IMG/VR virus record: IMGVR_UViG_3300044997_001199
Coordinates: 124,001-188,000 of that record
Strand: one strand, 5' to 3'
Length of the DNA stretch: 64,000 nucleotides
The notes under the pieces are model-generated. The model was not told where the DNA came from and ran no database searches. It saw only the letters and a program-made list of their open reading frames with translations. Below, in pieces: positions 51,995-58,300 of the stretch. Positions within the stretch are counted from its first letter, which is position 1. Every line of letters begins with the position of its first letter. The translations under genes and the position numbers were made by a program.

Positions 51995-53380
51995 TTACGA
52001 TTTAATTTGATTCAATAGTTGTTTGAGTTTGTTTGACTGTACTTCTGCTGTGATCTTGGGCGTATCTTTGGCAGTTTCTTGCATGGTGCTACGTGCCTTG
52101 ATCGACTCCATTATGGCCGATGCAGGATTTCTGGCGTGGCCTTCTTGTGCTTCCTCGCCGAGATCAGTGATACGCATGGTTTCGACGTTGTATTCTAGAT
52201 CGATCTTCTGGCCCACGCCGGTCGAGCTGCGCGATTTCATGCACTGAATCTGATAGCGGCCACGCTCGCGCATGGCACGACTGGTAAAGATACCAAACAC
52301 ATTGTCTGCGGTGTTGATCTTGCTGATACCGCCCGAAATATGACTGTGGTCAAACTCAATCTCTTCCACCGCAGATCGATTCAATTGACTGGCAGTCACA
52401 AACAACACATTGAGTTCTTTGGCCAGATTTCTCAGTTCTTCACTTACATACTTGTCTTTGACAAATAGGTCATTGGGCGATACCTTGGCTGACACCGGCA
52501 TCAAGAGATCCAGATAGTCAACCATGACAAAGTCCACACGGATACCTGTCTGTATCTGCAGCTCCTTGAGATAACTGCGGATATCATTTACTGTGCTTTG
52601 TGCAGACAAGGCCTTGACTCGATATTGCCCGGCTTTTTTGGCTACCAGTCGAACTTTGAGTTCTGTGGTATCGATATCTTTGCGAATATCTTTGGTTGAC
52701 ATATTAGTCAGCATGGCATCGGTTCTCAGTGCACACAGTTCTTCGCTGAGTTCCAAACTTACATACACCCCCGACAGGCCCTGCTGCAACCAATTCAATG
52801 CCAGGTTCAGCATTACCAGGCTTTTGCCCGATCCTGACCCACCTGCAAAGATATTAAGTTCTCCGCGGCTGAATCCACCATAGAGTAACCGGTCCAGTGT
52901 AGACCATCCTGTGCTGACCTGACCACCAGAATTGAAATATCGATTGATACGATCTCGGGGATCGGCCCAGTAGTCTGTGCCCATGTCCCGCGTGAGGCTG
53001 ATTTGCACTGCATCTTTGATCAGTTTTTCTACCGGGTCATATTCACCTTTTTCTAGCAGGTCCGCTGATTTGAGAATGGCTCGTTCCAGTTCCTGTCTAC
53101 GTGTAAATGATTCAAACTCAGTGAGAAACCAATCAAAATGTCCTTCATTCAGATCGGGTATAGATTCTAATTTCGTACCAGTGGCTGCCGTGATCTGAGC
53201 GCGGTCAGGCATAGTGCGGAATTCGTCGCTGTGCCGTTGAATGAATCTAGCGGTATCGCGAAGGCTACGATCAAAATTGTCCGGATTGAAGATGTTTTGT
53301 ACGCGCACGTAACTCTGTGCATCCTCTAGCATCATCTCCAAAAACAATCGCTGAACATCAACTCCGTAATCTTTGAGCAA
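51995..53380 (-). CDS. Replicative DNA helicase (DnaB/T4 gp41-like)
   Basis: GGSGSGKS; SLELSE; VDYLDL; TASQLNRS; SGGISK..TAD; TTG start. Confidence 0.95.
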   Translation of the reverse strand: MLKDYGVDVQRLFLEMMLEDAQSYVRVQNIFNPDNFDRSLRDTARFIQRHSDEFRTMPDRAQITAATGTKLESIPDLNEGHFDWFLTEFESFTRRQELERAILKSADLLEKGEYDPVEKLIKDAVQISLTRDMGTDYWADPRDRINRYFNSGGQVSTGWSTLDRLLYGGFSRGELNIFAGGSGSGKSLVMLNLALNWLQQGLSGVYVSLELSEELCALRTDAMLTNMSTKDIRKDIDTTELKVRLVAKKAGQYRVKALSAQSTVNDIRSYLKELQIQTGIRVDFVMVDYLDLLMPVSAKVSPNDLFVKDKYVSEELRNLAKELNVLFVTASQLNRSAVEEIEFDHSHISGGISKINTADNVFGIFTSRAMRERGRYQIQCMKSRSSTGVGQKIDLEYNVETMRITDLGEEAQEGHARNPASAIMESIKARSTMQETAKDTPKITAEVQSNKLKQLLNQIKS

Positions 53381-54359
53381 GCTGGCGCCTCCGTAGTTCA
53401 ATTTTGATCCGGCTGGTTTCCCGGGCCTGCATTATAGTTAGCACAGTGGCCAACTGGCCCCAACGAACCACTGCATCATTGACATCCTTGACATCGCTGG
53501 GCCAGTCAGGCATTGATACTGCCCATCCCAGTTCTATGGCCCGATCCACCAGGCGCAGGCCGGCTTCGTCCTGGTCTGGCACCACAGTGATCGCACGGTC
53601 CAGACTGCGGATCAATCGTGCCTGTGTGTCGGAAATATCAGCATGAAGCACTGCTAGCCCCGACACGCTCAAGGCATCAAACACACCCTCGGTCACGATC
53701 ACATGTTTCCAGGTCGGGCGTTGTAGGTCTGTGCCAAACACATAACCAGGCTGGATGTCGTGGATGTACTTGGGTGTGCGGTCGTCCAACATGCGCGAAC
53801 TGTAACCCACTATGACATTGTCATAGGTAAATGGCACTATGACCTGGGGACGGGTCCAATGCACACCGTCGTTTTTCTTCACGTAACCAAACCGGACAGT
53901 CATGAGCGGATAATCCGCGGGCACTGCACGGCGTCTTGCATAGTGCCACTCTGCTTCGTGCTCGGGTGTCAGCAGCTCGGCACCAGGAGGCAAATCGCGT
54001 TCCTCAAAACGGATGCTTTGCGACTCGTTGGCTGTGCGTTGCCGATCGTCCAGGATGCCCTGGACATCCCGATGTCGCAGACTTTCCAGATTGGCGCGTT
54101 CAATTTCTTCCTGCGGTACTCCCAACCATGACAGCAGCCGACGAGACTTGAAACTTAGTGTCCGACCTTGTATAAAGTTAGCGGTATATCCACAATTGAA
54201 ACAATGATACCCCCACCCCCGATCGGACACCTTGATTCCACCGCGGCTGCGCCGATCAGCCGAAGTGCCGTTGTGCACACAACAAGGAGCATCAAAACTG
54301 ATCCAACCGCTGGCCGAGGCCTTGCGGCGCGCAGGAACATAGGTTAGAATATCTAACAT
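53358..54359 (-). CDS. DNA primase (T4 gp61-like)
   Basis: CCVHN...YHCFNCG Zn finger; VTEGVFDA; PDQDEAG; KDVND (TOPRIM). Confidence 0.93.
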   Translation of the reverse strand: MLDILTYVPARRKASASGWISFDAPCCVHNGTSADRRSRGGIKVSDRGWGYHCFNCGYTANFIQGRTLSFKSRRLLSWLGVPQEEIERANLESLRHRDVQGILDDRQRTANESQSIRFEERDLPPGAELLTPEHEAEWHYARRRAVPADYPLMTVRFGYVKKNDGVHWTRPQVIVPFTYDNVIVGYSSRMLDDRTPKYIHDIQPGYVFGTDLQRPTWKHVIVTEGVFDALSVSGLAVLHADISDTQARLIRSLDRAITVVPDQDEAGLRLVDRAIELGWAVSMPDWPSDVKDVNDAVVRWGQLATVLTIMQARETSRIKIELRRRQLAQRLRS

Positions 54360-54390
54360 GTCCATATTGTAACAGAACTCAAATCAACGA

Positions 54391-55461
54391 TCAACGGTAT
54401 TGGAGATTGGTAATCGTGCCGTTGTCGATGTAGACTGTGGCCGTTTGTGTGCCTTGAAACTGTATGGGAGTGTAGCCCGATCCACCATCCGTGATAGTGA
54501 TAGTGCTCACAGCGCCGTCGCTGCCGATGGTGGCTCGAGCACGAGCACCTGCCCCGTTGCCTAGAATCTGTACCCTGGGATTGGCCACATAATTTTGTCC
54601 AAGATTGCCCAGAGCAATGGAGGTCACCGCACCGGCTGTGGTCGTGGCCGTGGCCGTGGCTCCAGACCCAATGGAATTGTTGAATGCTGCTCGAATCAAG
54701 GGATGGAATCCCTGTATGTTAAAATATTGTGTGCTGGTCTCTGCAAAGTATTCAAAACTTTCAGTAATGTCGTACCAAACAGATTCACAGTTTTCTGCGC
54801 CTTGAAATTTCACAGTACCGGTAAATGTGTCAAGATCCATCTTTACGGTGGTCAGACTCTGATGACTGGTATCTATGTAACTGCTGTAGAATTCTGTGAG
54901 TTGAGTGGTATTGACCGGGGGTGGATAGTTGGCCCAGTCTGGCCAGTTGGTGGGGCCGGGCTGCAGTTGTTGAGCCTTGTCATAGATAGTGGGAATTGTC
55001 AAGACCGCGCTGGGCACAAACTCGGGCAACACACTGTCCACGATGTCGCAGTAGCCTCGGGCCTGTGAATTGGCATTGACATACACTGCCTGCACATAGT
55101 TGCCGCTGGTTCGTTCAACACTGTAACTGGCCGGCTGAGCAGTGATTTCAATGGTGTCGGCGGTATCCAGTACTACCTTGACACGCCCAGTGGGTGCATT
55201 GAGTATTTCCATGGGCTTTTCTATCAAGAGGCGATCGCCGTTTTGGCTCAGTAAACGGAACACAAAAGAACTGCCGGTAATATTCACTGGCTTCTGATCT
55301 TGATTGATGAACTCAAACAACAACACATTGTCTACACCTTTGTTTACAGTCAAATATTTTGCGTACACCGGGTCATACCTCGCAGTAAAGTATCCACCGC
55401 TGGTGTCGATCAATAATACTCGAACAATTTGTTGGTATAAGTAAGCAGTGGTAGAATACAT
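54391..55461 (-). CDS. Probable virion/baseplate protein
   Basis: Late promoter; BppU-like N-half; Gly/Thr-rich I.I...G..Y..P.V.I.G.G.GA.A.A C-terminal motif. Confidence 0.6.
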   Translation of the reverse strand: MYSTTAYLYQQIVRVLLIDTSGGYFTARYDPVYAKYLTVNKGVDNVLLFEFINQDQKPVNITGSSFVFRLLSQNGDRLLIEKPMEILNAPTGRVKVVLDTADTIEITAQPASYSVERTSGNYVQAVYVNANSQARGYCDIVDSVLPEFVPSAVLTIPTIYDKAQQLQPGPTNWPDWANYPPPVNTTQLTEFYSSYIDTSHQSLTTVKMDLDTFTGTVKFQGAENCESVWYDITESFEYFAETSTQYFNIQGFHPLIRAAFNNSIGSGATATATTTAGAVTSIALGNLGQNYVANPRVQILGNGAGARARATIGSDGAVSTITITDGGSGYTPIQFQGTQTATVYIDNGTITNLQYR

Positions 55462-55481: not shown

Positions 55482-55859
55482 ATGAGCAACACAGTGTTTG
55501 ATAAGCTAGCGGAAAAGTATCCATTTATCTCACTGTGCGTCTACGCCAATGTTGAGTATGTGGGTGTGATACAGAATCGAGACGATGCTGTGACCACGAT
55601 CTATGACTACGGTTCAGTGATCACAGCCCAAGACAAATTGGATTTCCTGGAACTGGCTGCAGTATGGTGGTGGGATTCCAATAGATCCATACCCATAAAC
55701 ATTTTTCTCAAGGGAGAATGGGATCGTTTTCGATTTACTCTCCGAACATTTAGCAACAAGGATCTTGCTATAGTCCATGGACCTGTGTGCAGCCTGGCTG
55801 ATATTTCTCGCAAAAAGTCCAAACGCAAATCAATCATGCTGGTCCGTAGAATTGAGTAG
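55482..55859 (+). CDS. Conserved hypothetical protein
   Basis: 125-aa ORF, divergent from upstream gene. Confidence 0.7.
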   Translation: MSNTVFDKLAEKYPFISLCVYANVEYVGVIQNRDDAVTTIYDYGSVITAQDKLDFLELAAVWWWDSNRSIPINIFLKGEWDRFRFTLRTFSNKDLAIVHGPVCSLADISRKKSKRKSIMLVRRIE

Positions 55860-56408
55860 ATTCATGTGAAGAGCGACCAACATGCTGTAACTGACCGCAT
55901 GAGACTTTTTGAATACAAACCCGCGGCTATCGTCGCCATTCCATACTTCAGCAAACACCTGGGGCCACGGTTGTCCTTGTAGATATGCCTTGCCGGGACG
56001 TATCACACTGATAAATGCAGCCATACGTTCAATGGAATCGGGGCGCATCTGGTCCAGAAGTTTGGTGTAGTTTCCGATGTGCACTAACTTTTCGGCCCAG
56101 ACCGGGTCGGTCCAGAGTCGTGACCACGGCGGTATGCGTGTGAGCAATTGTTCATAGTGGTCTGTGTCACGTATCAGTTGGTAGACCGACATGTTGAGCA
56201 AATCAATTTTGAAGTAGCCTCGTTGATCGGCAGTTTCATAATCTATAGACGCACACCCCGACACTGGGTCTCGGGGAATACCAGTGACATAGATGCCCGA
56301 ATTATGACGACAAGCGTCACCGAATCGGGTTTGTCGAGCCGGTATGTGTTTGATGAGTTTGAGAATTGCAGTGCGATCTGCAAGGTCAATGTCTATGTCA
56401 GCACTCAT
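55830..56408 (-). CDS. Minimal DnaE (Pol III alpha)-like protein
   Basis: ADIDID; RHNSGIYV; GYFKIDLL; IRPG; FKKSHA.SY in only 192 aa. Confidence 0.8.
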   Translation of the reverse strand: MSADIDIDLADRTAILKLIKHIPARQTRFGDACRHNSGIYVTGIPRDPVSGCASIDYETADQRGYFKIDLLNMSVYQLIRDTDHYEQLLTRIPPWSRLWTDPVWAEKLVHIGNYTKLLDQMRPDSIERMAAFISVIRPGKAYLQGQPWPQVFAEVWNGDDSRGFVFKKSHAVSYSMLVALHMNLLNSTDQHD

Positions 56409-56442: not shown

Positions 56443-57600
56443 TCATTGGCGTACAAAATTTGCAAGAATCTGATCGAATCTGATCACAGCTTGATAATCG
56501 CATTCGCAGGTCAAAAAGTTTAGTTTGTTTTGCTGAGTCATACATCGATACTGCTCACTGTCAAACACCTCCGGATTGTTGTGTAGCCAGGCAACTGCAT
56601 GACTGAGTTGTTGATAGCGCACGTCGTGGTCTAGTATACCGTCAAATTTCTGCATTTCTTCAGGTAGCAAATTCCATGCAGTGTAAAAACCAATTTCATT
56701 GTATAAACGATTTATATTTGCCCCGGCCACTGGCAGTGGTAGAGTTTCGGCATAAAAACATTTTAATGCCTTTTCTGTGATCGATAATTCATTGTTTTGC
56801 CAGCTTGTTTCGGGAAATATTACACAGGCATGTTGAAAATACAAGGGCAAATGAAAATGACCCGGAGGTATTTTTCCAAAGCGATCGTCGATGCCCACAG
56901 AAACGGACTGGTCGTAGTAGGTGTTGGCGAAATCCTCGATCAATGAATGTGAGTATTTCTGATTGACCCATGTTCGGAATTTGGTATCTTCCGATGATTC
57001 CCAACAAGATTCTCCTATTTCACATATCTGCTCGGTCACACTGTTTTTTATAGTGATATCTAAATTCAACTGTGCTAGGTAATCCATAAACAATTGTCGC
57101 ACAGTGCGATTGGCACCATTGATATAGAACAAAGAATTTGTCTTTTCATCTGTGCGTTGTTTACACAAATCATAGTATTGTGGATAGAAATGTCTGGTCC
57201 AGTAGTCTCTGCAGGTCATTATTTCGTCAGGAAACCAGATGACTTTGTTTTTGATTTCAACCTCGTCAGACAGATAACTGTTGGCAATTAAAAATACATT
57301 GTTATGTTGTAGTAGATATTTTAGTGCCGGGCTGGACACGCTAAGTGGTTCACCTCTGTTACAGATCAATACGATATCATACTGTTGTATTTGCGCGTCC
57401 GTGATCGATAGTGTTTTACTGTTTTTTTCGAATAAAACGCTGAGATTGTAATCTTCTTTATTGAACTTAAATGCTGTGTCAGTTAAAAATGTATATTGAT
57501 TGTTATTCTTGTAGCTTGCCCGAGATTGCTCATAGGCGTTCCATGCATCAAATAACTGGATTCCGATTGACGGTCGAGGATTATTAATAAGAATTTTCAC
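56443..57600 (-). CDS. GT10-like putative glycosyltransferase
   Basis: VIFPETS....SITEK..K.F....P.P.AG....LYNEIGF. Confidence 0.5.
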   Translation of the reverse strand: MKILINNPRPSIGIQLFDAWNAYEQSRASYKNNNQYTFLTDTAFKFNKEDYNLSVLFEKNSKTLSITDAQIQQYDIVLICNRGEPLSVSSPALKYLLQHNNVFLIANSYLSDEVEIKNKVIWFPDEIMTCRDYWTRHFYPQYYDLCKQRTDEKTNSLFYINGANRTVRQLFMDYLAQLNLDITIKNSVTEQICEIGESCWESSEDTKFRTWVNQKYSHSLIEDFANTYYDQSVSVGIDDRFGKIPPGHFHLPLYFQHACVIFPETSWQNNELSITEKALKCFYAETLPLPVAGANINRLYNEIGFYTAWNLLPEEMQKFDGILDHDVRYQQLSHAVAWLHNNPEVFDSEQYRCMTQQNKLNFLTCECDYQAVIRFDQILANFVRQ

Positions 57601-57601
57601 G

Positions 57602-58300
57602 TTACCATCCTGCTTTTTCTAGTAGGTCTTTGATTCTCTCTTGGTCGGATAGATAGTCGTGAAACTTTTTTTTCCAACTGTCCGATTCGATATAGGGCCA
57701 TATCATGGCAAGTTGATCTGCTGTTAAATTTTCCAGAAACTGCTGACCTGACTTGCAGTTGTATATCACCCAGGGTGAAATACGACCCGAAACCACAGCA
57801 TGACACAGTGTATGAACATTTCCGTATCGCAGGCAATGCTCGGCAGCGGCCTGATTTCGTTCGGCCCAATCAATGGCCCATTCCAGTGTACGTGCTAGTG
57901 CCTCCTCAGCAGATTCTTGTCGCAGATGCGTGACTAGATATTCTGTATATGCTGTATCGCTGGCCCAGCGATCGACTTTTTTGTTGTTCTTTAATAGCCA
58001 GGTCAGAAATTGTGCAGGAGCCACAGCGCGGGTATCCACACAATATCGACCCCATTTCACAAATGCTCGATAATACGGCGAATCCGCGAAATCGTCAAAG
58101 GTCCTTAGGCGATTAGATCCCTGTGACATCTGATAAAACTGCAAAAAGGCCTGGAACCCCAGCTGTACCCCGCGCTCGCCTTGTTCATGCCGCCGCCGCT
58201 TGGGCTCACACATGTGCACTGCCAGGCTGTTTTCTCGAGAGAATTCTTTACGACAATGATCACAACGAAATTTAATCGCTGTTTCCATGTTTTTTAACAT
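57602..58300 (-). CDS. Conserved protein with N-terminal zinc finger
   Basis: CDHCRKEFSRENSLAVHMC. Confidence 0.7.
   Translation of the reverse strand: MLKNMETAIKFRCDHCRKEFSRENSLAVHMCEPKRRRHEQGERGVQLGFQAFLQFYQMSQGSNRLRTFDDFADSPYYRAFVKWGRYCVDTRAVAPAQFLTWLLKNNKKVDRWASDTAYTEYLVTHLRQESAEEALARTLEWAIDWAERNQAAAEHCLRYGNVHTLCHAVVSGRISPWVIYNCKSGQQFLENLTADQLAMIWPYIESDSWKKKFHDYLSDQERIKDLLEKAGW

What the first reader, a model, noticed from the sequence alone, without database searches (positions are those of the whole stretch)
55830..56408. 192-aa minimal DnaE retaining all three catalytic aspartates
Bacterial Pol III alpha is over 1000 aa. This ORF strings together in order the DnaE motifs (P)DIDID, H-x-SG-x-V, K-x-D-x-L, IRPG and F-x-KSHA-x-Y, with PHP, thumb, most fingers, clamp-binding and OB domains absent; start and stop are clean and neighbours are not DnaE pieces. 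It may be the smallest C-family polymerase core: a primer-extension, terminal transferase or repair enzyme, a decoy for the host replisome, or half of a split enzyme.
Basis: partly seen in the sequence, partly recalled or inferred. Interest (0 to 1): 0.7.

Follow-up and report, generated by a model that had tools for sequence, protein, structure and literature searches.

The report
Half of a split mini polymerase
This 192-residue gene of a lake-water giant phage is the metal-binding half of a two-piece, stripped-down relative of the bacterial replicative DNA polymerase. The kind was predicted by computer in 2021 and, as far as I could find, has never been tested at the bench.

Summary
The ORF is real: window 55830-56408, minus strand, 192 aa. 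Its motifs are genuine DnaE motifs. D4, D6 and D69 match E. coli D401, D403 and D555 and are invariant in 78 diverse homologues. The AF2 model (pLDDT 95.8) matches only C-family polymerases (Z up to 9.5). dN/dS is about 0.1.

It is not a stand-alone enzyme. It lacks the nucleotide-binding strand with the R-G-S motif. That part is a separate 173-aa gene 70.5 kb upstream in the same phage, outside the window.

Evidence that the two halves act as one enzyme:
- They occur in near-identical sets of cultured jumbo phages.
- Three metagenomic proteins of 375-376 aa carry them fused.
- They are predicted to bind (ipSAE 0.88, best control 0.27).

The genome also has a T4-like family B polymerase and no other DnaE domain.

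Iyer et al. (Viruses 2021) described exactly this arrangement as the split minimal Pol III alpha of group 2.2 jumbo phages. The ORF matches PHROG 11778. It is therefore a new member of a known, biochemically untested kind.

The most likely function is the Mg2+- and template-binding subunit of a small, non-proofreading, dNTP-specific DNA polymerase. Its gene always sits beside primase and helicase. Its role in the cell is unknown.

The parts
55830..56408 (-). C-terminal (Mg2+- and template-binding) subunit of the split minimal Pol III alpha, 192 aa (P0001). Its partner, the 173-aa N-terminal subunit (P0121), lies outside the window at G000:C1:108769-109290, minus strand, 70.5 kb upstream.
   Evidence: PHROG 11778 at E 1.9e-51. 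AF2 model pLDDT 95.8. The top 15 structural matches are all C-family polymerases, Z 6.2-9.5, with 187-191 of 192 residues aligned to E. coli 399-781. dN/dS is about 0.1. Partner.
56385..56399 (-). Codons for D4-I-D6-I-D8, the strand that carries two catalytic aspartates (E. coli D401 and D403) plus the DnaE-type third Asp (D405).
   Evidence: D4 and D6 are invariant and D8 is present in 76 of 78 homologues. Alignment to E. coli 399-405 is. The role of D405 as a DnaE-versus-PolC marker comes from PMC3919608.
56202..56210 (-). Codons for K67-I-D69, which correspond to E. coli K553 and the third catalytic aspartate D555.
   Evidence: K67 and D69 are invariant in 78 of 78 homologues. K553A is reported as inactive.
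55995..56000 (-). Codons for R137-P138, which correspond to E. coli R639-P640, residues that contact the templating nucleotide.
   Evidence: R is present in 76 of 78 and P in 78 of 78 homologues. The contacts are described in the preprint.
55899..55919 (-). Codons for F164-V-F-K-K-S-H170, the helix-loop-helix loop. F164 takes the place of the base-stacking E. coli Y754, and H170 that of the steric gate H760.
   Evidence: Position 164 is Y in 55 and F in 6 of 78 homologues. Position 166 is F in 65 and Y in 9 of 78. Position 170 is H in 77 of 78. The alignment to E. coli 739-769 is.
55482..55859 (+). Conserved convergent neighbour of 125 aa (PHROG 11637, function unknown). It overlaps the 3' end of the polymerase gene by 30 nt. 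Whether it belongs to the enzyme is not known.
   Evidence: It is present next to the C-half in 80 of 80 related loci and in PA5oct, Phosso, GAP32, Atu_ph07 and Vibrio phage 2.275.O. No Pfam, Atlas or PDB fold lead was found.
54391..55461 (-). 356-aa protein of the conserved block, resembling virion or baseplate proteins (context only).
   Evidence: PHROG hits to structural proteins. Its PA5oct counterpart is annotated as a structural protein detected by MS. It is present in 72 of 80 loci.
53358..54365 (-). Toprim (DnaG/gp61-type) primase of the conserved block (context only).
   Evidence: Pfam Toprim_2 at E 1.8e-5. Present in 59 of 80 loci, limited by contig ends. Annotated as primase in PA5oct, Phosso and GAP32.
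51995..53401 (-). DnaB/gp41-type replicative helicase of the conserved block (context only).
   Evidence: Pfam DnaB_C at E 1.3e-22. Present in 50 of 80 loci.

Best explanation
The ORF encodes the C-terminal subunit of a two-subunit minimal C-family (Pol III alpha / DnaE-type) DNA polymerase of a freshwater jumbo phage.

This subunit supplies:
- the strand with two catalytic aspartates (D4, D6) and the third aspartate (D69) with its lysine (K67);
- the R-P loop that touches the templating base;
- the helix-loop-helix with a stacking aromatic residue (F164) and a steric-gate histidine (H170).

A separately encoded 173-aa subunit, 70.5 kb away, supplies the preceding strand with the R142-G143-S144 motif that holds the incoming dNTP.

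The two chains are inferred to associate non-covalently. The model pairs these two strands edge to edge, which rebuilds the Pol-beta-like nucleotidyltransferase sheet. There is no intein.

The resulting 365-aa enzyme has no PHP or proofreading domain, no thumb, little of the index finger, no clamp-binding motif and no OB domain. I therefore infer a distributive, non-proofreading, dNTP-specific DNA polymerase that works beside the phage's T4-type family B replicase.

Its gene always sits next to the primase-helicase genes. My preferred role, held with low confidence, is short DNA synthesis at the primosome: primer extension or gap filling.

Shown here: homology, fold, conserved residues, the partner gene, the fusions and purifying selection. 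Inferred: heterodimer formation, catalysis and substrate. Speculative: the cellular role.
For: Homology and fold:
- PHROG 11778 at E 1.9e-51.
- The family profile hits PDB Pol III alpha at E 8e-6 with motif-to-motif alignment.
- AF2 model pLDDT 95.8. The top 15-16 PDB matches are all C-family polymerases, Z up to 9.5, while the best unrelated chain scores Z 3.7.

Conserved residues: D4, D6, K67, D69 and P138 are invariant. D8, H35, G38, R137, K167 and H170 are present in at least 90% of 78 sequences that share 26-64% identity with the query.

Partner gene:
- A Pfam PF07733 hit above threshold at C1:108775-108996.
- A 173-aa gene matching PHROG 11127 at E 8.8e-39.
- It aligns to E. coli 318-392, and G-R-G-S is invariant.
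- It ends 3 residues after the E. coli L392 equivalent, while this ORF starts 3 residues before the first Asp.

One enzyme:
- The genus distributions of the two halves in cultured phages are near-identical: 96 records for the C-half and 101 for the N-half, the latter including four Clostridium phage records.
- All 3 near-complete close relatives tested carry both halves.
- The homologue counts are similar, 6765 and 6573.
- Three fused proteins of 375-376 aa with a conserved junction were found.
- Complex prediction gives ipSAE 0.88 against a best control of 0.27. That mark was reached by 51 of 78 solved complexes and 2 of 108 mismatched pairs. The runs agree in at least 98% of contacts and the partner's pLDDT is at least 88. 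N-half residues 134-147 touch C-half residues 3-10.

Selection: dN/dS is 0.09-0.12 over 81 CDSs.

DNA rather than RNA synthesis: the steric-gate His is present in 77 of 78 homologues.

No other DnaE parts: none in this record or in the complete PA5oct and Phosso genomes. A family B polymerase is present.

Prior description: Iyer et al. 2021, PMC7824862.
Against: - No activity has been measured for any member of the family. No such report turned up in the searchable literature.
- The index-finger residues that wall the dNTP pocket in E. coli (R709, K714, K715) and the thumb fall in deleted regions.
- E. coli R390, whose R390A mutant is 27-fold less efficient, aligns with an invariant Glu (E170) in the N-half. 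The pocket is therefore not canonical.
- The complex prediction may partly reflect the model's memory of the intact DnaE palm. It shows likeness, not binding.
- Synteny with primase-helicase may only reflect clustering of replication genes.
- The genome record is about 61% complete, so absence of other parts rests mainly on two complete relatives.
Confidence: 0.8

Rival explanations
1. Stand-alone enzyme: the 192-aa protein by itself is a complete minimal C-family polymerase or terminal transferase.
For: It holds all three catalytic aspartates and folds confidently on its own.
Against: It lacks strand P-beta-1 and the R-G-S motif. These lie within 4 A of the dNTP in E. coli, and R362A is reported dead. 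They are encoded by a co-occurring partner gene. The partner is fused to this protein in three metagenomic proteins. It is also predicted to form a contact surface of about 155 residue pairs with it.
Confidence: 0.03
2. The heterodimer forms but is not a templated DNA polymerase. It could be a template-independent nucleotidyltransferase, for example one that adds tails to DNA ends, modifies a protein or nucleic acid, or makes a nucleotide signal.
For: The Pol-beta-like fold serves many such enzymes (general knowledge). The thumb and most of the index finger are gone, and R390 is replaced by an invariant Glu.
Against: [quoted passage not shown] About 110 residues of finger helices are kept. Both genes sit in replication modules.
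Confidence: 0.12
3. Decaying or inactive remnant of a captured bacterial dnaE, or a catalytically dead decoy or scaffold for the host replisome.
For: The protein is very short for a DnaE, and no Pfam hit was found for this half.
Against: dN/dS is about 0.1. All 81 CDSs are intact and of one length class. The catalytic residues are invariant across 78 homologues that share 26-64% identity with the query. There are 349 clusters at 50% identity. No clamp-, tau- or epsilon-binding region that a decoy would need is retained.
Confidence: 0.03
4. The two halves are joined after translation by a split intein, as in cyanobacterial DnaE.
For: DnaE is the classic split-intein host (PMC2677866 appears; general knowledge).
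Against: The N-half ends right after the helix that precedes the DxD strand, and the C-half starts at M-S-A-D. This leaves no room for an IntN of about 100 aa or an IntC of about 35 aa. No intein domain was found by Pfam. The fused proteins join the halves by a plain 10-residue loop.
Confidence: 0.01

Closest known systems
Split minimal DNA Pol III alpha of group 2.2 jumbo phages (Iyer, Anantharaman, Krishnan, Burroughs and Aravind, Viruses 2021, PMC7824862); PHROG 11778 (C-half) and PHROG 11127 (N-half)
   Same: It has the same two-gene architecture: an N-terminal NTP-binding half and a C-terminal Mg2+/template-binding half encoded far apart. It has the same companions, a family B polymerase and a T4-like primase-helicase, and no other Pol III domain.
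   Different: It shares only 36-39% identity with cultured members such as PA5oct, GAP32 and Atu_ph07. It belongs to an abundant uncultured lake-water lineage. Points added here, which I did not see in the passages of that paper that I read, are the fused 375-aa forms, the invariant Glu at the R390 position, the fixed synteny of each half and the selection estimate.
Bacterial Pol III alpha (E. coli DnaE, PDB 2HNH/5FKU; Thermus 2HPI/3E0D; Mycobacterium DnaE1 5LEW/7PU7)
   Same: It shares the Pol-beta-like palm, the Asp triad plus the DnaE-type fourth Asp, K553, the R-P template loop and the helix-loop-helix with the steric-gate His.
   Different: The phage enzyme totals 365 aa in two chains, against more than 1100 aa in one chain. 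It has no PHP, thumb (about 432-510), most of the index finger (about 642-738), ring or little fingers, clamp motif, OB or tau-binding domain. R390 is replaced by Glu.
Cyanobacterial split-intein DnaE
   Same: A C-family polymerase encoded by two distant genes.
   Different: There the pieces are full-size, split elsewhere in the protein, and ligated by a split intein (general knowledge). Here there is no intein, and the split falls at E. coli 393/399, between the two core strands of the palm.
Bacillus subtilis DnaE as primer-extending partner of PolC (functional analogy, from general knowledge, not tested here)
   Same: A second, non-proofreading C-family polymerase works next to the main replicase and primase.
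   Different: B. subtilis DnaE is full length and binds the clamp. The phage's main replicase is family B. The analogy rests only on gene neighbourhood.
Split family B polymerase of nucleus-forming (chimallivirus) jumbo phages (preprint PMC13648687, listed)
   Same: A jumbo-phage DNA polymerase assembled from separately encoded pieces.
   Different: It belongs to a different polymerase family with an unrelated fold, and to a different phage group.

Membership tests
C-family DNA polymerase catalytic core (Pol III alpha / DnaE) | Three catalytic aspartates (E. coli D401, D403, D555) | tested here: met
   D4, D6 and D69 are invariant in 78 of 78 homologues and align to D401, D403 and D555.
C-family DNA polymerase catalytic core (Pol III alpha / DnaE) | R-G-S (GS) motif on the first palm strand, which binds the incoming dNTP | tested here: not met
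   The motif is absent from this 192-aa ORF. It is present and invariant (R142 G143 S144) in the separately encoded 173-aa partner. The feature is met only by the pair.
C-family DNA polymerase catalytic core (Pol III alpha / DnaE) | Palm plus proximal finger fold | tested here: met
   The top 15 VIA-align matches are all C-family polymerases, Z 6.2-9.5, with 171-191 residues aligned. The best unrelated chain scores Z 3.7. Foldseek probability is 1.0.
C-family DNA polymerase catalytic core (Pol III alpha / DnaE) | Helix-loop-helix with a base-stacking Tyr (Y754) and a steric-gate His (H760); K553; R639-P640 | tested here: met
   Position 164 is Y or F in 61 of 78, H170 is present in 77 of 78, K67 in 78 of 78, R137 in 76 of 78 and P138 in 78 of 78.
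C-family DNA polymerase catalytic core (Pol III alpha / DnaE) | PHP domain, thumb, full fingers (including R709, K714, K715), clamp-binding motif and OB domain | tested here: not met
   No PHP or finger-domain Pfam hit was found in this record or in the complete PA5oct and Phosso genomes, apart from one sub-threshold finger-domain hit (E 0.002) that falls inside the Phosso C-half gene itself. The structural alignment spans E. coli 399-781 with about 190 residues missing.
C-family DNA polymerase catalytic core (Pol III alpha / DnaE) | Templated dNTP polymerisation | not testable with these tools
   This needs biochemistry. No published assay was found.
Split minimal Pol III alpha of group 2.2 jumbo phages (Iyer et al. 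2021) | C-terminal module of about 190 aa with the Mg2+-binding residues | tested here: met
   PHROG 11778 at E 1.9e-51, covering residues 3-187 of 192. 95 of 96 phage homologues cover at least 80% of the query at the same length.
Split minimal Pol III alpha of group 2.2 jumbo phages (Iyer et al. 2021) | Separate N-terminal NTP-binding module encoded at a distant locus | tested here: met
   The 173-aa gene lies at G000:C1:108769-109290, 70.5 kb away on the same strand. The distance is 34-224 kb in cultured relatives and 90-97 kb in near-complete close relatives.
Split minimal Pol III alpha of group 2.2 jumbo phages (Iyer et al. 2021) | Accompanied by a family B polymerase and a T4-like primosome, with no other Pol III domain | tested here: met
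   A 910-aa open frame matches DNA_pol_B at E 4e-31. A DnaB helicase and a Toprim primase are adjacent. No PHP or finger-domain match was found in this record.
Split-intein DnaE | IntN at the end of the N piece and IntC at the start of the C piece | tested here: not met
   No intein domain was found, and the chain ends leave no room for one.

The most novel reading that the evidence does not exclude
The 173 + 192 aa pair is an active, template-dependent DNA polymerase. It would be the smallest C-family polymerase known. It would work without thumb, PHP or clamp as a primosome-coupled primer-extension enzyme that hands over to the phage's family B replicase, possibly with the always-adjacent 125-aa protein as an accessory. 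On that reading it approximates the ancestral core from which bacterial Pol III alpha was built, as Iyer et al. suggested.
Probability: 0.25. Interest if true: 0.75.

Novelty: new member of a known kind. Interest (0 to 1): 0.4.

Why it matters
C-family polymerases replicate all bacterial chromosomes and are drug targets, yet every studied member exceeds 900 residues. A naturally occurring 365-residue, two-chain version would define the minimal catalytic unit of the family. It keeps nearly all first-shell residues but lacks the thumb, PHP and most fingers.

It would also show which parts serve speed, processivity and fidelity rather than chemistry, and it would give a small, tractable model for structural work.

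It raises a further question: why do thousands of jumbo phages that already have a T4-type replicase keep a second, unrelated polymerase under strong selection?

The kind was predicted in 2021, so the value here lies in testability rather than discovery. The partner gene, the natural fusions, the conserved-residue checklist and the culturable relatives (PA5oct, GAP32 and the E. coli jumbo phages) make the experiment straightforward.

Tried and rejected
- Pfam gave no hit on the C-half. NCBIfam gave only sub-threshold DnaE hits.
- A single-sequence PDB search gave only a spurious YdhT match. The family profile was needed.
- Megablast of 10 kb of the window against cultured phages found nothing.
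- I tested whether the gene just upstream of the PA5oct C-half is the N-half. It is not.
- Searches for other DnaE domains (PHP, finger, whole-protein model) in this record and in two complete relatives found only the two halves.
- A DnaQ-like exonuclease is annotated near the GAP32 copy. None was found in this record.
- The conserved 125-aa neighbour gave no lead from Pfam, Atlas or a PDB fold search. Its model is only moderate, at pLDDT 72.
I re-sent it with permitted rows only.
- No close relative of the fused form was found in IMG/VR.
- No RNA run was listed for the gene, so there is no transcription evidence.
- The PA5oct omics paper and the PaBG paper say nothing specific about these genes.
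- A call with a mistyped coordinate failed, and one with too many search terms failed.
Full report
**Observation.**
The ORF is on the minus strand at window 55830-56408, with an ATG start, a TGA stop and 192 aa.
- D4-I-D6-I-D8
- H35-x-S-G38
- K67-I-D69-L-L
- I136-R-P-G139
- F166-K-K-S-H170-A

The window is part of a 215,330-bp IMG/VR virus record (window = C1:124001-188000; CheckV estimates 61% completeness). The same DNA occurs in several lake-water metagenomes.

**What the protein is.**
Pfam finds nothing. PHROG 11778 ('DNA polymerase', a 197-position profile) matches at E 1.9e-51 over residues 3-187, and the full-length DnaE PHROG 405 matches at E 2e-7.

I aligned 78 diverse full-length homologues that share 26-64% identity with the query.
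- D4, D6, K67, D69 and P138 are invariant.
- D8, H35, G38, R137, K167 and H170 are present in at least 90%.

The profile of that alignment hits E. coli, Thermus and Mycobacterium Pol III alpha in the PDB at E 8e-6 to 1e-4. It aligns DIDID to E. coli 401-405, K-x-D to K553/D555, R-P to 639-640 and F-K-K-S-H to 756-760.

The AlphaFold2 model is very confident (pLDDT 95.8, pTM 0.88).
- Foldseek's best 16 PDB matches are all C-family polymerases.
- VIA-align gives Z 6.2-9.5 for 15 of them, with 171-191 of 192 residues aligned.
- The aligned ranges are E. coli 399-781, Thermus 460-841 and PolC 970-1299.
- The best unrelated chain scores Z 3.7.

The protein corresponds to the second part of the DnaE palm plus the proximal fingers. 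About 190 residues are deleted: the thumb (roughly E. coli 432-510) and most of the index finger (roughly 642-738).

**It is half an enzyme.**
A Pfam DNA_pol3_alpha search of the whole record finds a second piece at C1:108775-108996. This is a 173-aa gene (P0121) at C1:108769-109290 on the same strand, 70.5 kb upstream and outside the window.
- It matches PHROG 11127 at E 8.8e-39.
- It aligns to E. coli alpha 318-392.
- It carries an invariant G-x-G-R142-G143-S144.

In the E. coli ternary complex the R362-G363-S364 motif sits on palm strand 1. It lies within 4 A of the incoming dGTP, and R362A is reported dead (preprint 10.64898/2026.06.29.735100).

The N-half ends three residues after the equivalent of E. 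coli L392. The ORF under study starts three residues before the equivalent of D401. The break therefore falls in the loop between palm strands 1 and 2. The same preprint describes residues 271-393 as the part of the palm that stays rigid on DNA binding, and the part carrying D401 and D403 as mobile. The split thus coincides with that boundary.

There is no room for an intein at the chain ends, and no intein domain was detected.

**Evidence that the two halves act together.**
1. Phyletic pattern.
   - tblastn finds the C-half in 96 cultured phage records and the N-half in 101. The genus counts are almost identical: Escherichia 34 and 34, Pseudomonas 11 and 11, Klebsiella 11 and 10, Salmonella 8 and 8, Erwinia 8 and 8. 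The N-half set also includes four Clostridium phage records that have no counterpart in the C-half set.
   - The large protein database holds 6765 C-half and 6573 N-half homologues.
   - All three near-complete close relatives tested (342-364 kb) carry exactly one N-half, 90-97 kb from the C-half.
2. Rosetta-stone fusions.
   - Three metagenomic proteins of 375-376 aa (P0288, P0391, P0392) share 78-81% identity and come from ENA and Logan assemblies.
   - Each carries the N-half and C-half in one chain, joined by a conserved 10-residue loop.
   - P0288 matches both PHROGs end to end, and it matches full-length DnaE collinearly across the junction.
3. Complex prediction.
   - ipSAE is 0.88 against a best control of 0.27. 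That mark was reached by 51 of 78 solved complexes and 2 of 108 mismatched pairs.
   - The three runs agree in at least 98% of contacts, and the partner's pLDDT is at least 88.
   - There are about 155 contacts, and N-half residues 134-147 (N-N-I-V-W-G-V-G-R-G-S...) lie against C-half residues 3-10 (A-D-I-D-I-D-L-A).
   - That is the strand-1/strand-2 pairing of the Pol-beta-like fold.
   - The score may owe something to the model's memory of intact DnaE, so it shows likeness rather than proven binding.

**What is kept and what is lost.**
I compared the pair with the first-shell residues listed for the E. coli ternary complex.

| Role in E. coli | E. coli residues | Phage pair |
|---|---|---|
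| dNTP contact (GS motif) | R362, G363, S364 | R142, G143, S144 (N-half), kept |
| Catalytic aspartates | D401, D403, D555 | D4, D6, D69, kept |
| DnaE-type extra Asp (Asn in PolC; PMC3919608) | D405 | D8, kept |
| Primer-end phosphate contact | K553 | K67, kept |
| Templating-base contact | R639, P640 | R137, P138, kept |
| Base stacking | Y754 | Y in 55 of 78; F164 in this protein |
| Helix-loop-helix loop | F756 | F166, kept |
| Index-finger pivot | K758 | K168, kept |
| Steric gate against rNTPs | H760 | H170, present in 77 of 78 |
| Index-finger pocket wall | R709, K714, K715 | region deleted |
| Palm arginine near the dNTP | R390 | aligns with an invariant Glu, E170 of the N-half |

No PHP or finger-domain match, and no further DnaE piece, was found in this record or in the complete PA5oct and Phosso genomes. 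The only finger-domain hit (E 0.002, below threshold) lies inside the Phosso C-half gene itself. The record does encode a 910-aa family B polymerase.

**Selection and abundance.**
IMG/VR holds at least 592 relatives. In 81 CDSs the gene is intact, 186-198 aa long and always begins MSADIDID. Pairwise dN/dS is 0.09-0.12. There are 349 clusters at 50% identity, and nearly all full-length members are 185-215 aa. This is a functional gene, not a remnant.

**Context.**
The block 'C-half, then a convergent 125-aa ORF, then a structural-like protein, then Toprim primase, then DnaB helicase' is conserved.
- In 80 related loci the 125-aa ORF is present in 80, the structural-like protein in 72, the primase in 59 and the helicase in 50. 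The lower counts are limited by contig ends.
- The N-half is never within 10 kb of the C-half.
- The same block occurs in PA5oct, Phosso, GAP32, Atu_ph07 and Vibrio phage 2.275.O.

The N-half has its own conserved setting. One or more small ORFs follow it. A Cpn10-like gene follows in PA5oct, the Vibrio phage and this genome. A clamp-loader subunit follows in Atu_ph07, SCTP-2 and GAP32. Both halves therefore sit in replication modules.

**Mechanism.**
The most likely mechanism is as follows.
- The two chains assemble non-covalently into a 365-aa C-family core.
- The N-half positions the dNTP.
- The C-half binds the two metals, the primer end and the templating base, and it excludes ribonucleotides through H170.
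- Lacking an exonuclease, thumb and clamp contact, the enzyme should be distributive and error-prone compared with Pol III.
- It probably serves the family B replisome in short syntheses.

Iyer et al. proposed synthesis of one strand, or repair. The fixed neighbourhood with primase-helicase leads me to favour primer extension or gap filling, but this is inference from synteny only. A template-independent transferase activity cannot be excluded.

**Comparison with the literature.**
Iyer et al. [quoted passage not shown] They note that it accompanies a family B polymerase.

The present ORF fits every feature of that description. It shares 36-39% identity with cultured members, so it is a new member of a known kind. 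Some GenBank records already label homologues 'DNA polymerase III alpha'. I found no experimental study of the family.

**Limits.**
- Catalysis, binding and the cellular role are all untested.
- The record is incomplete.
- The N-half alignment has only 15 sequences.
- No transcription data could be found.

Noticed in passing
window 55482-55859 (+): A 125-aa protein (PHROG 11637, function unknown) is always convergent with the C-half gene and overlaps its 3' end. This holds in 80 of 80 related loci and in five distant cultured phages. It has an invariant W-W-W and P-I and a basic C-terminal tail. It could be an accessory of the mini-polymerase or merely syntenic.
   Followed up: partly
L006 1066-2193 (P0288); L096 519-1649 (P0392); P0391: Three metagenomic proteins of 375-376 aa (78-81% identical) are natural fusions of the N-half and C-half with a conserved linker. 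The gene sits at the C-half locus, with the usual convergent small ORF downstream. None was found in IMG/VR.
   Followed up: partly
G000:C1:108769-109290 (-), N-half residue E170: The position aligned with E. coli R390 (a dNTP-contacting arginine; R390A is 27-fold less efficient) is an invariant glutamate in all 15 phage N-halves. The following, last residue is usually R or K.
   Followed up: partly
L001 884-1270 (-) = G000:C1:108158-108544: A Cpn10/GroES-like gene lies just downstream of the N-half. The same arrangement occurs in PA5oct and Vibrio phage 2.275.O. A clamp-loader subunit follows in Atu_ph07, SCTP-2 and GAP32.
   Followed up: partly
L010, L017, L029, L039, L063, L080 (between primase and helicase): In several relatives 0.7-1.1 kb separates the primase and helicase genes, whereas in the window they overlap (53358-53401). 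This looks like an inserted ORF, possibly a mobile element.
   Followed up: no
L093 1-71 (GAP32_275): GAP32 has a gene annotated as a DnaQ-like 'Pol III epsilon' exonuclease about 5 kb upstream of its C-half. No PF00929 match exists in the present, incomplete record.
   Followed up: partly
window 56443-57600 (-): The 385-aa ORF directly upstream of the C-half has no PHROG match and only a sub-threshold Pfam hit (Phospholip_A2_1, E 0.006, below the curated cut-off). It is found in only 6 of 80 related loci, so this is a variable slot next to a fixed block.
   Followed up: no
window 57602-58300 (-): A 232-aa ORF shows a weak, sub-threshold C2H2 zinc-finger-like match at its N-terminus.
   Followed up: no
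P0404, P0405; PHROGs 7513, 13169, 21652, 11165, 12219: Phage and metagenome proteins of 460-550 aa (at least two with PHP plus the N-terminal palm) and of 780-820 aa also match pieces of DnaE. Other ways of splitting or shortening DnaE may therefore exist in phages.
   Followed up: no
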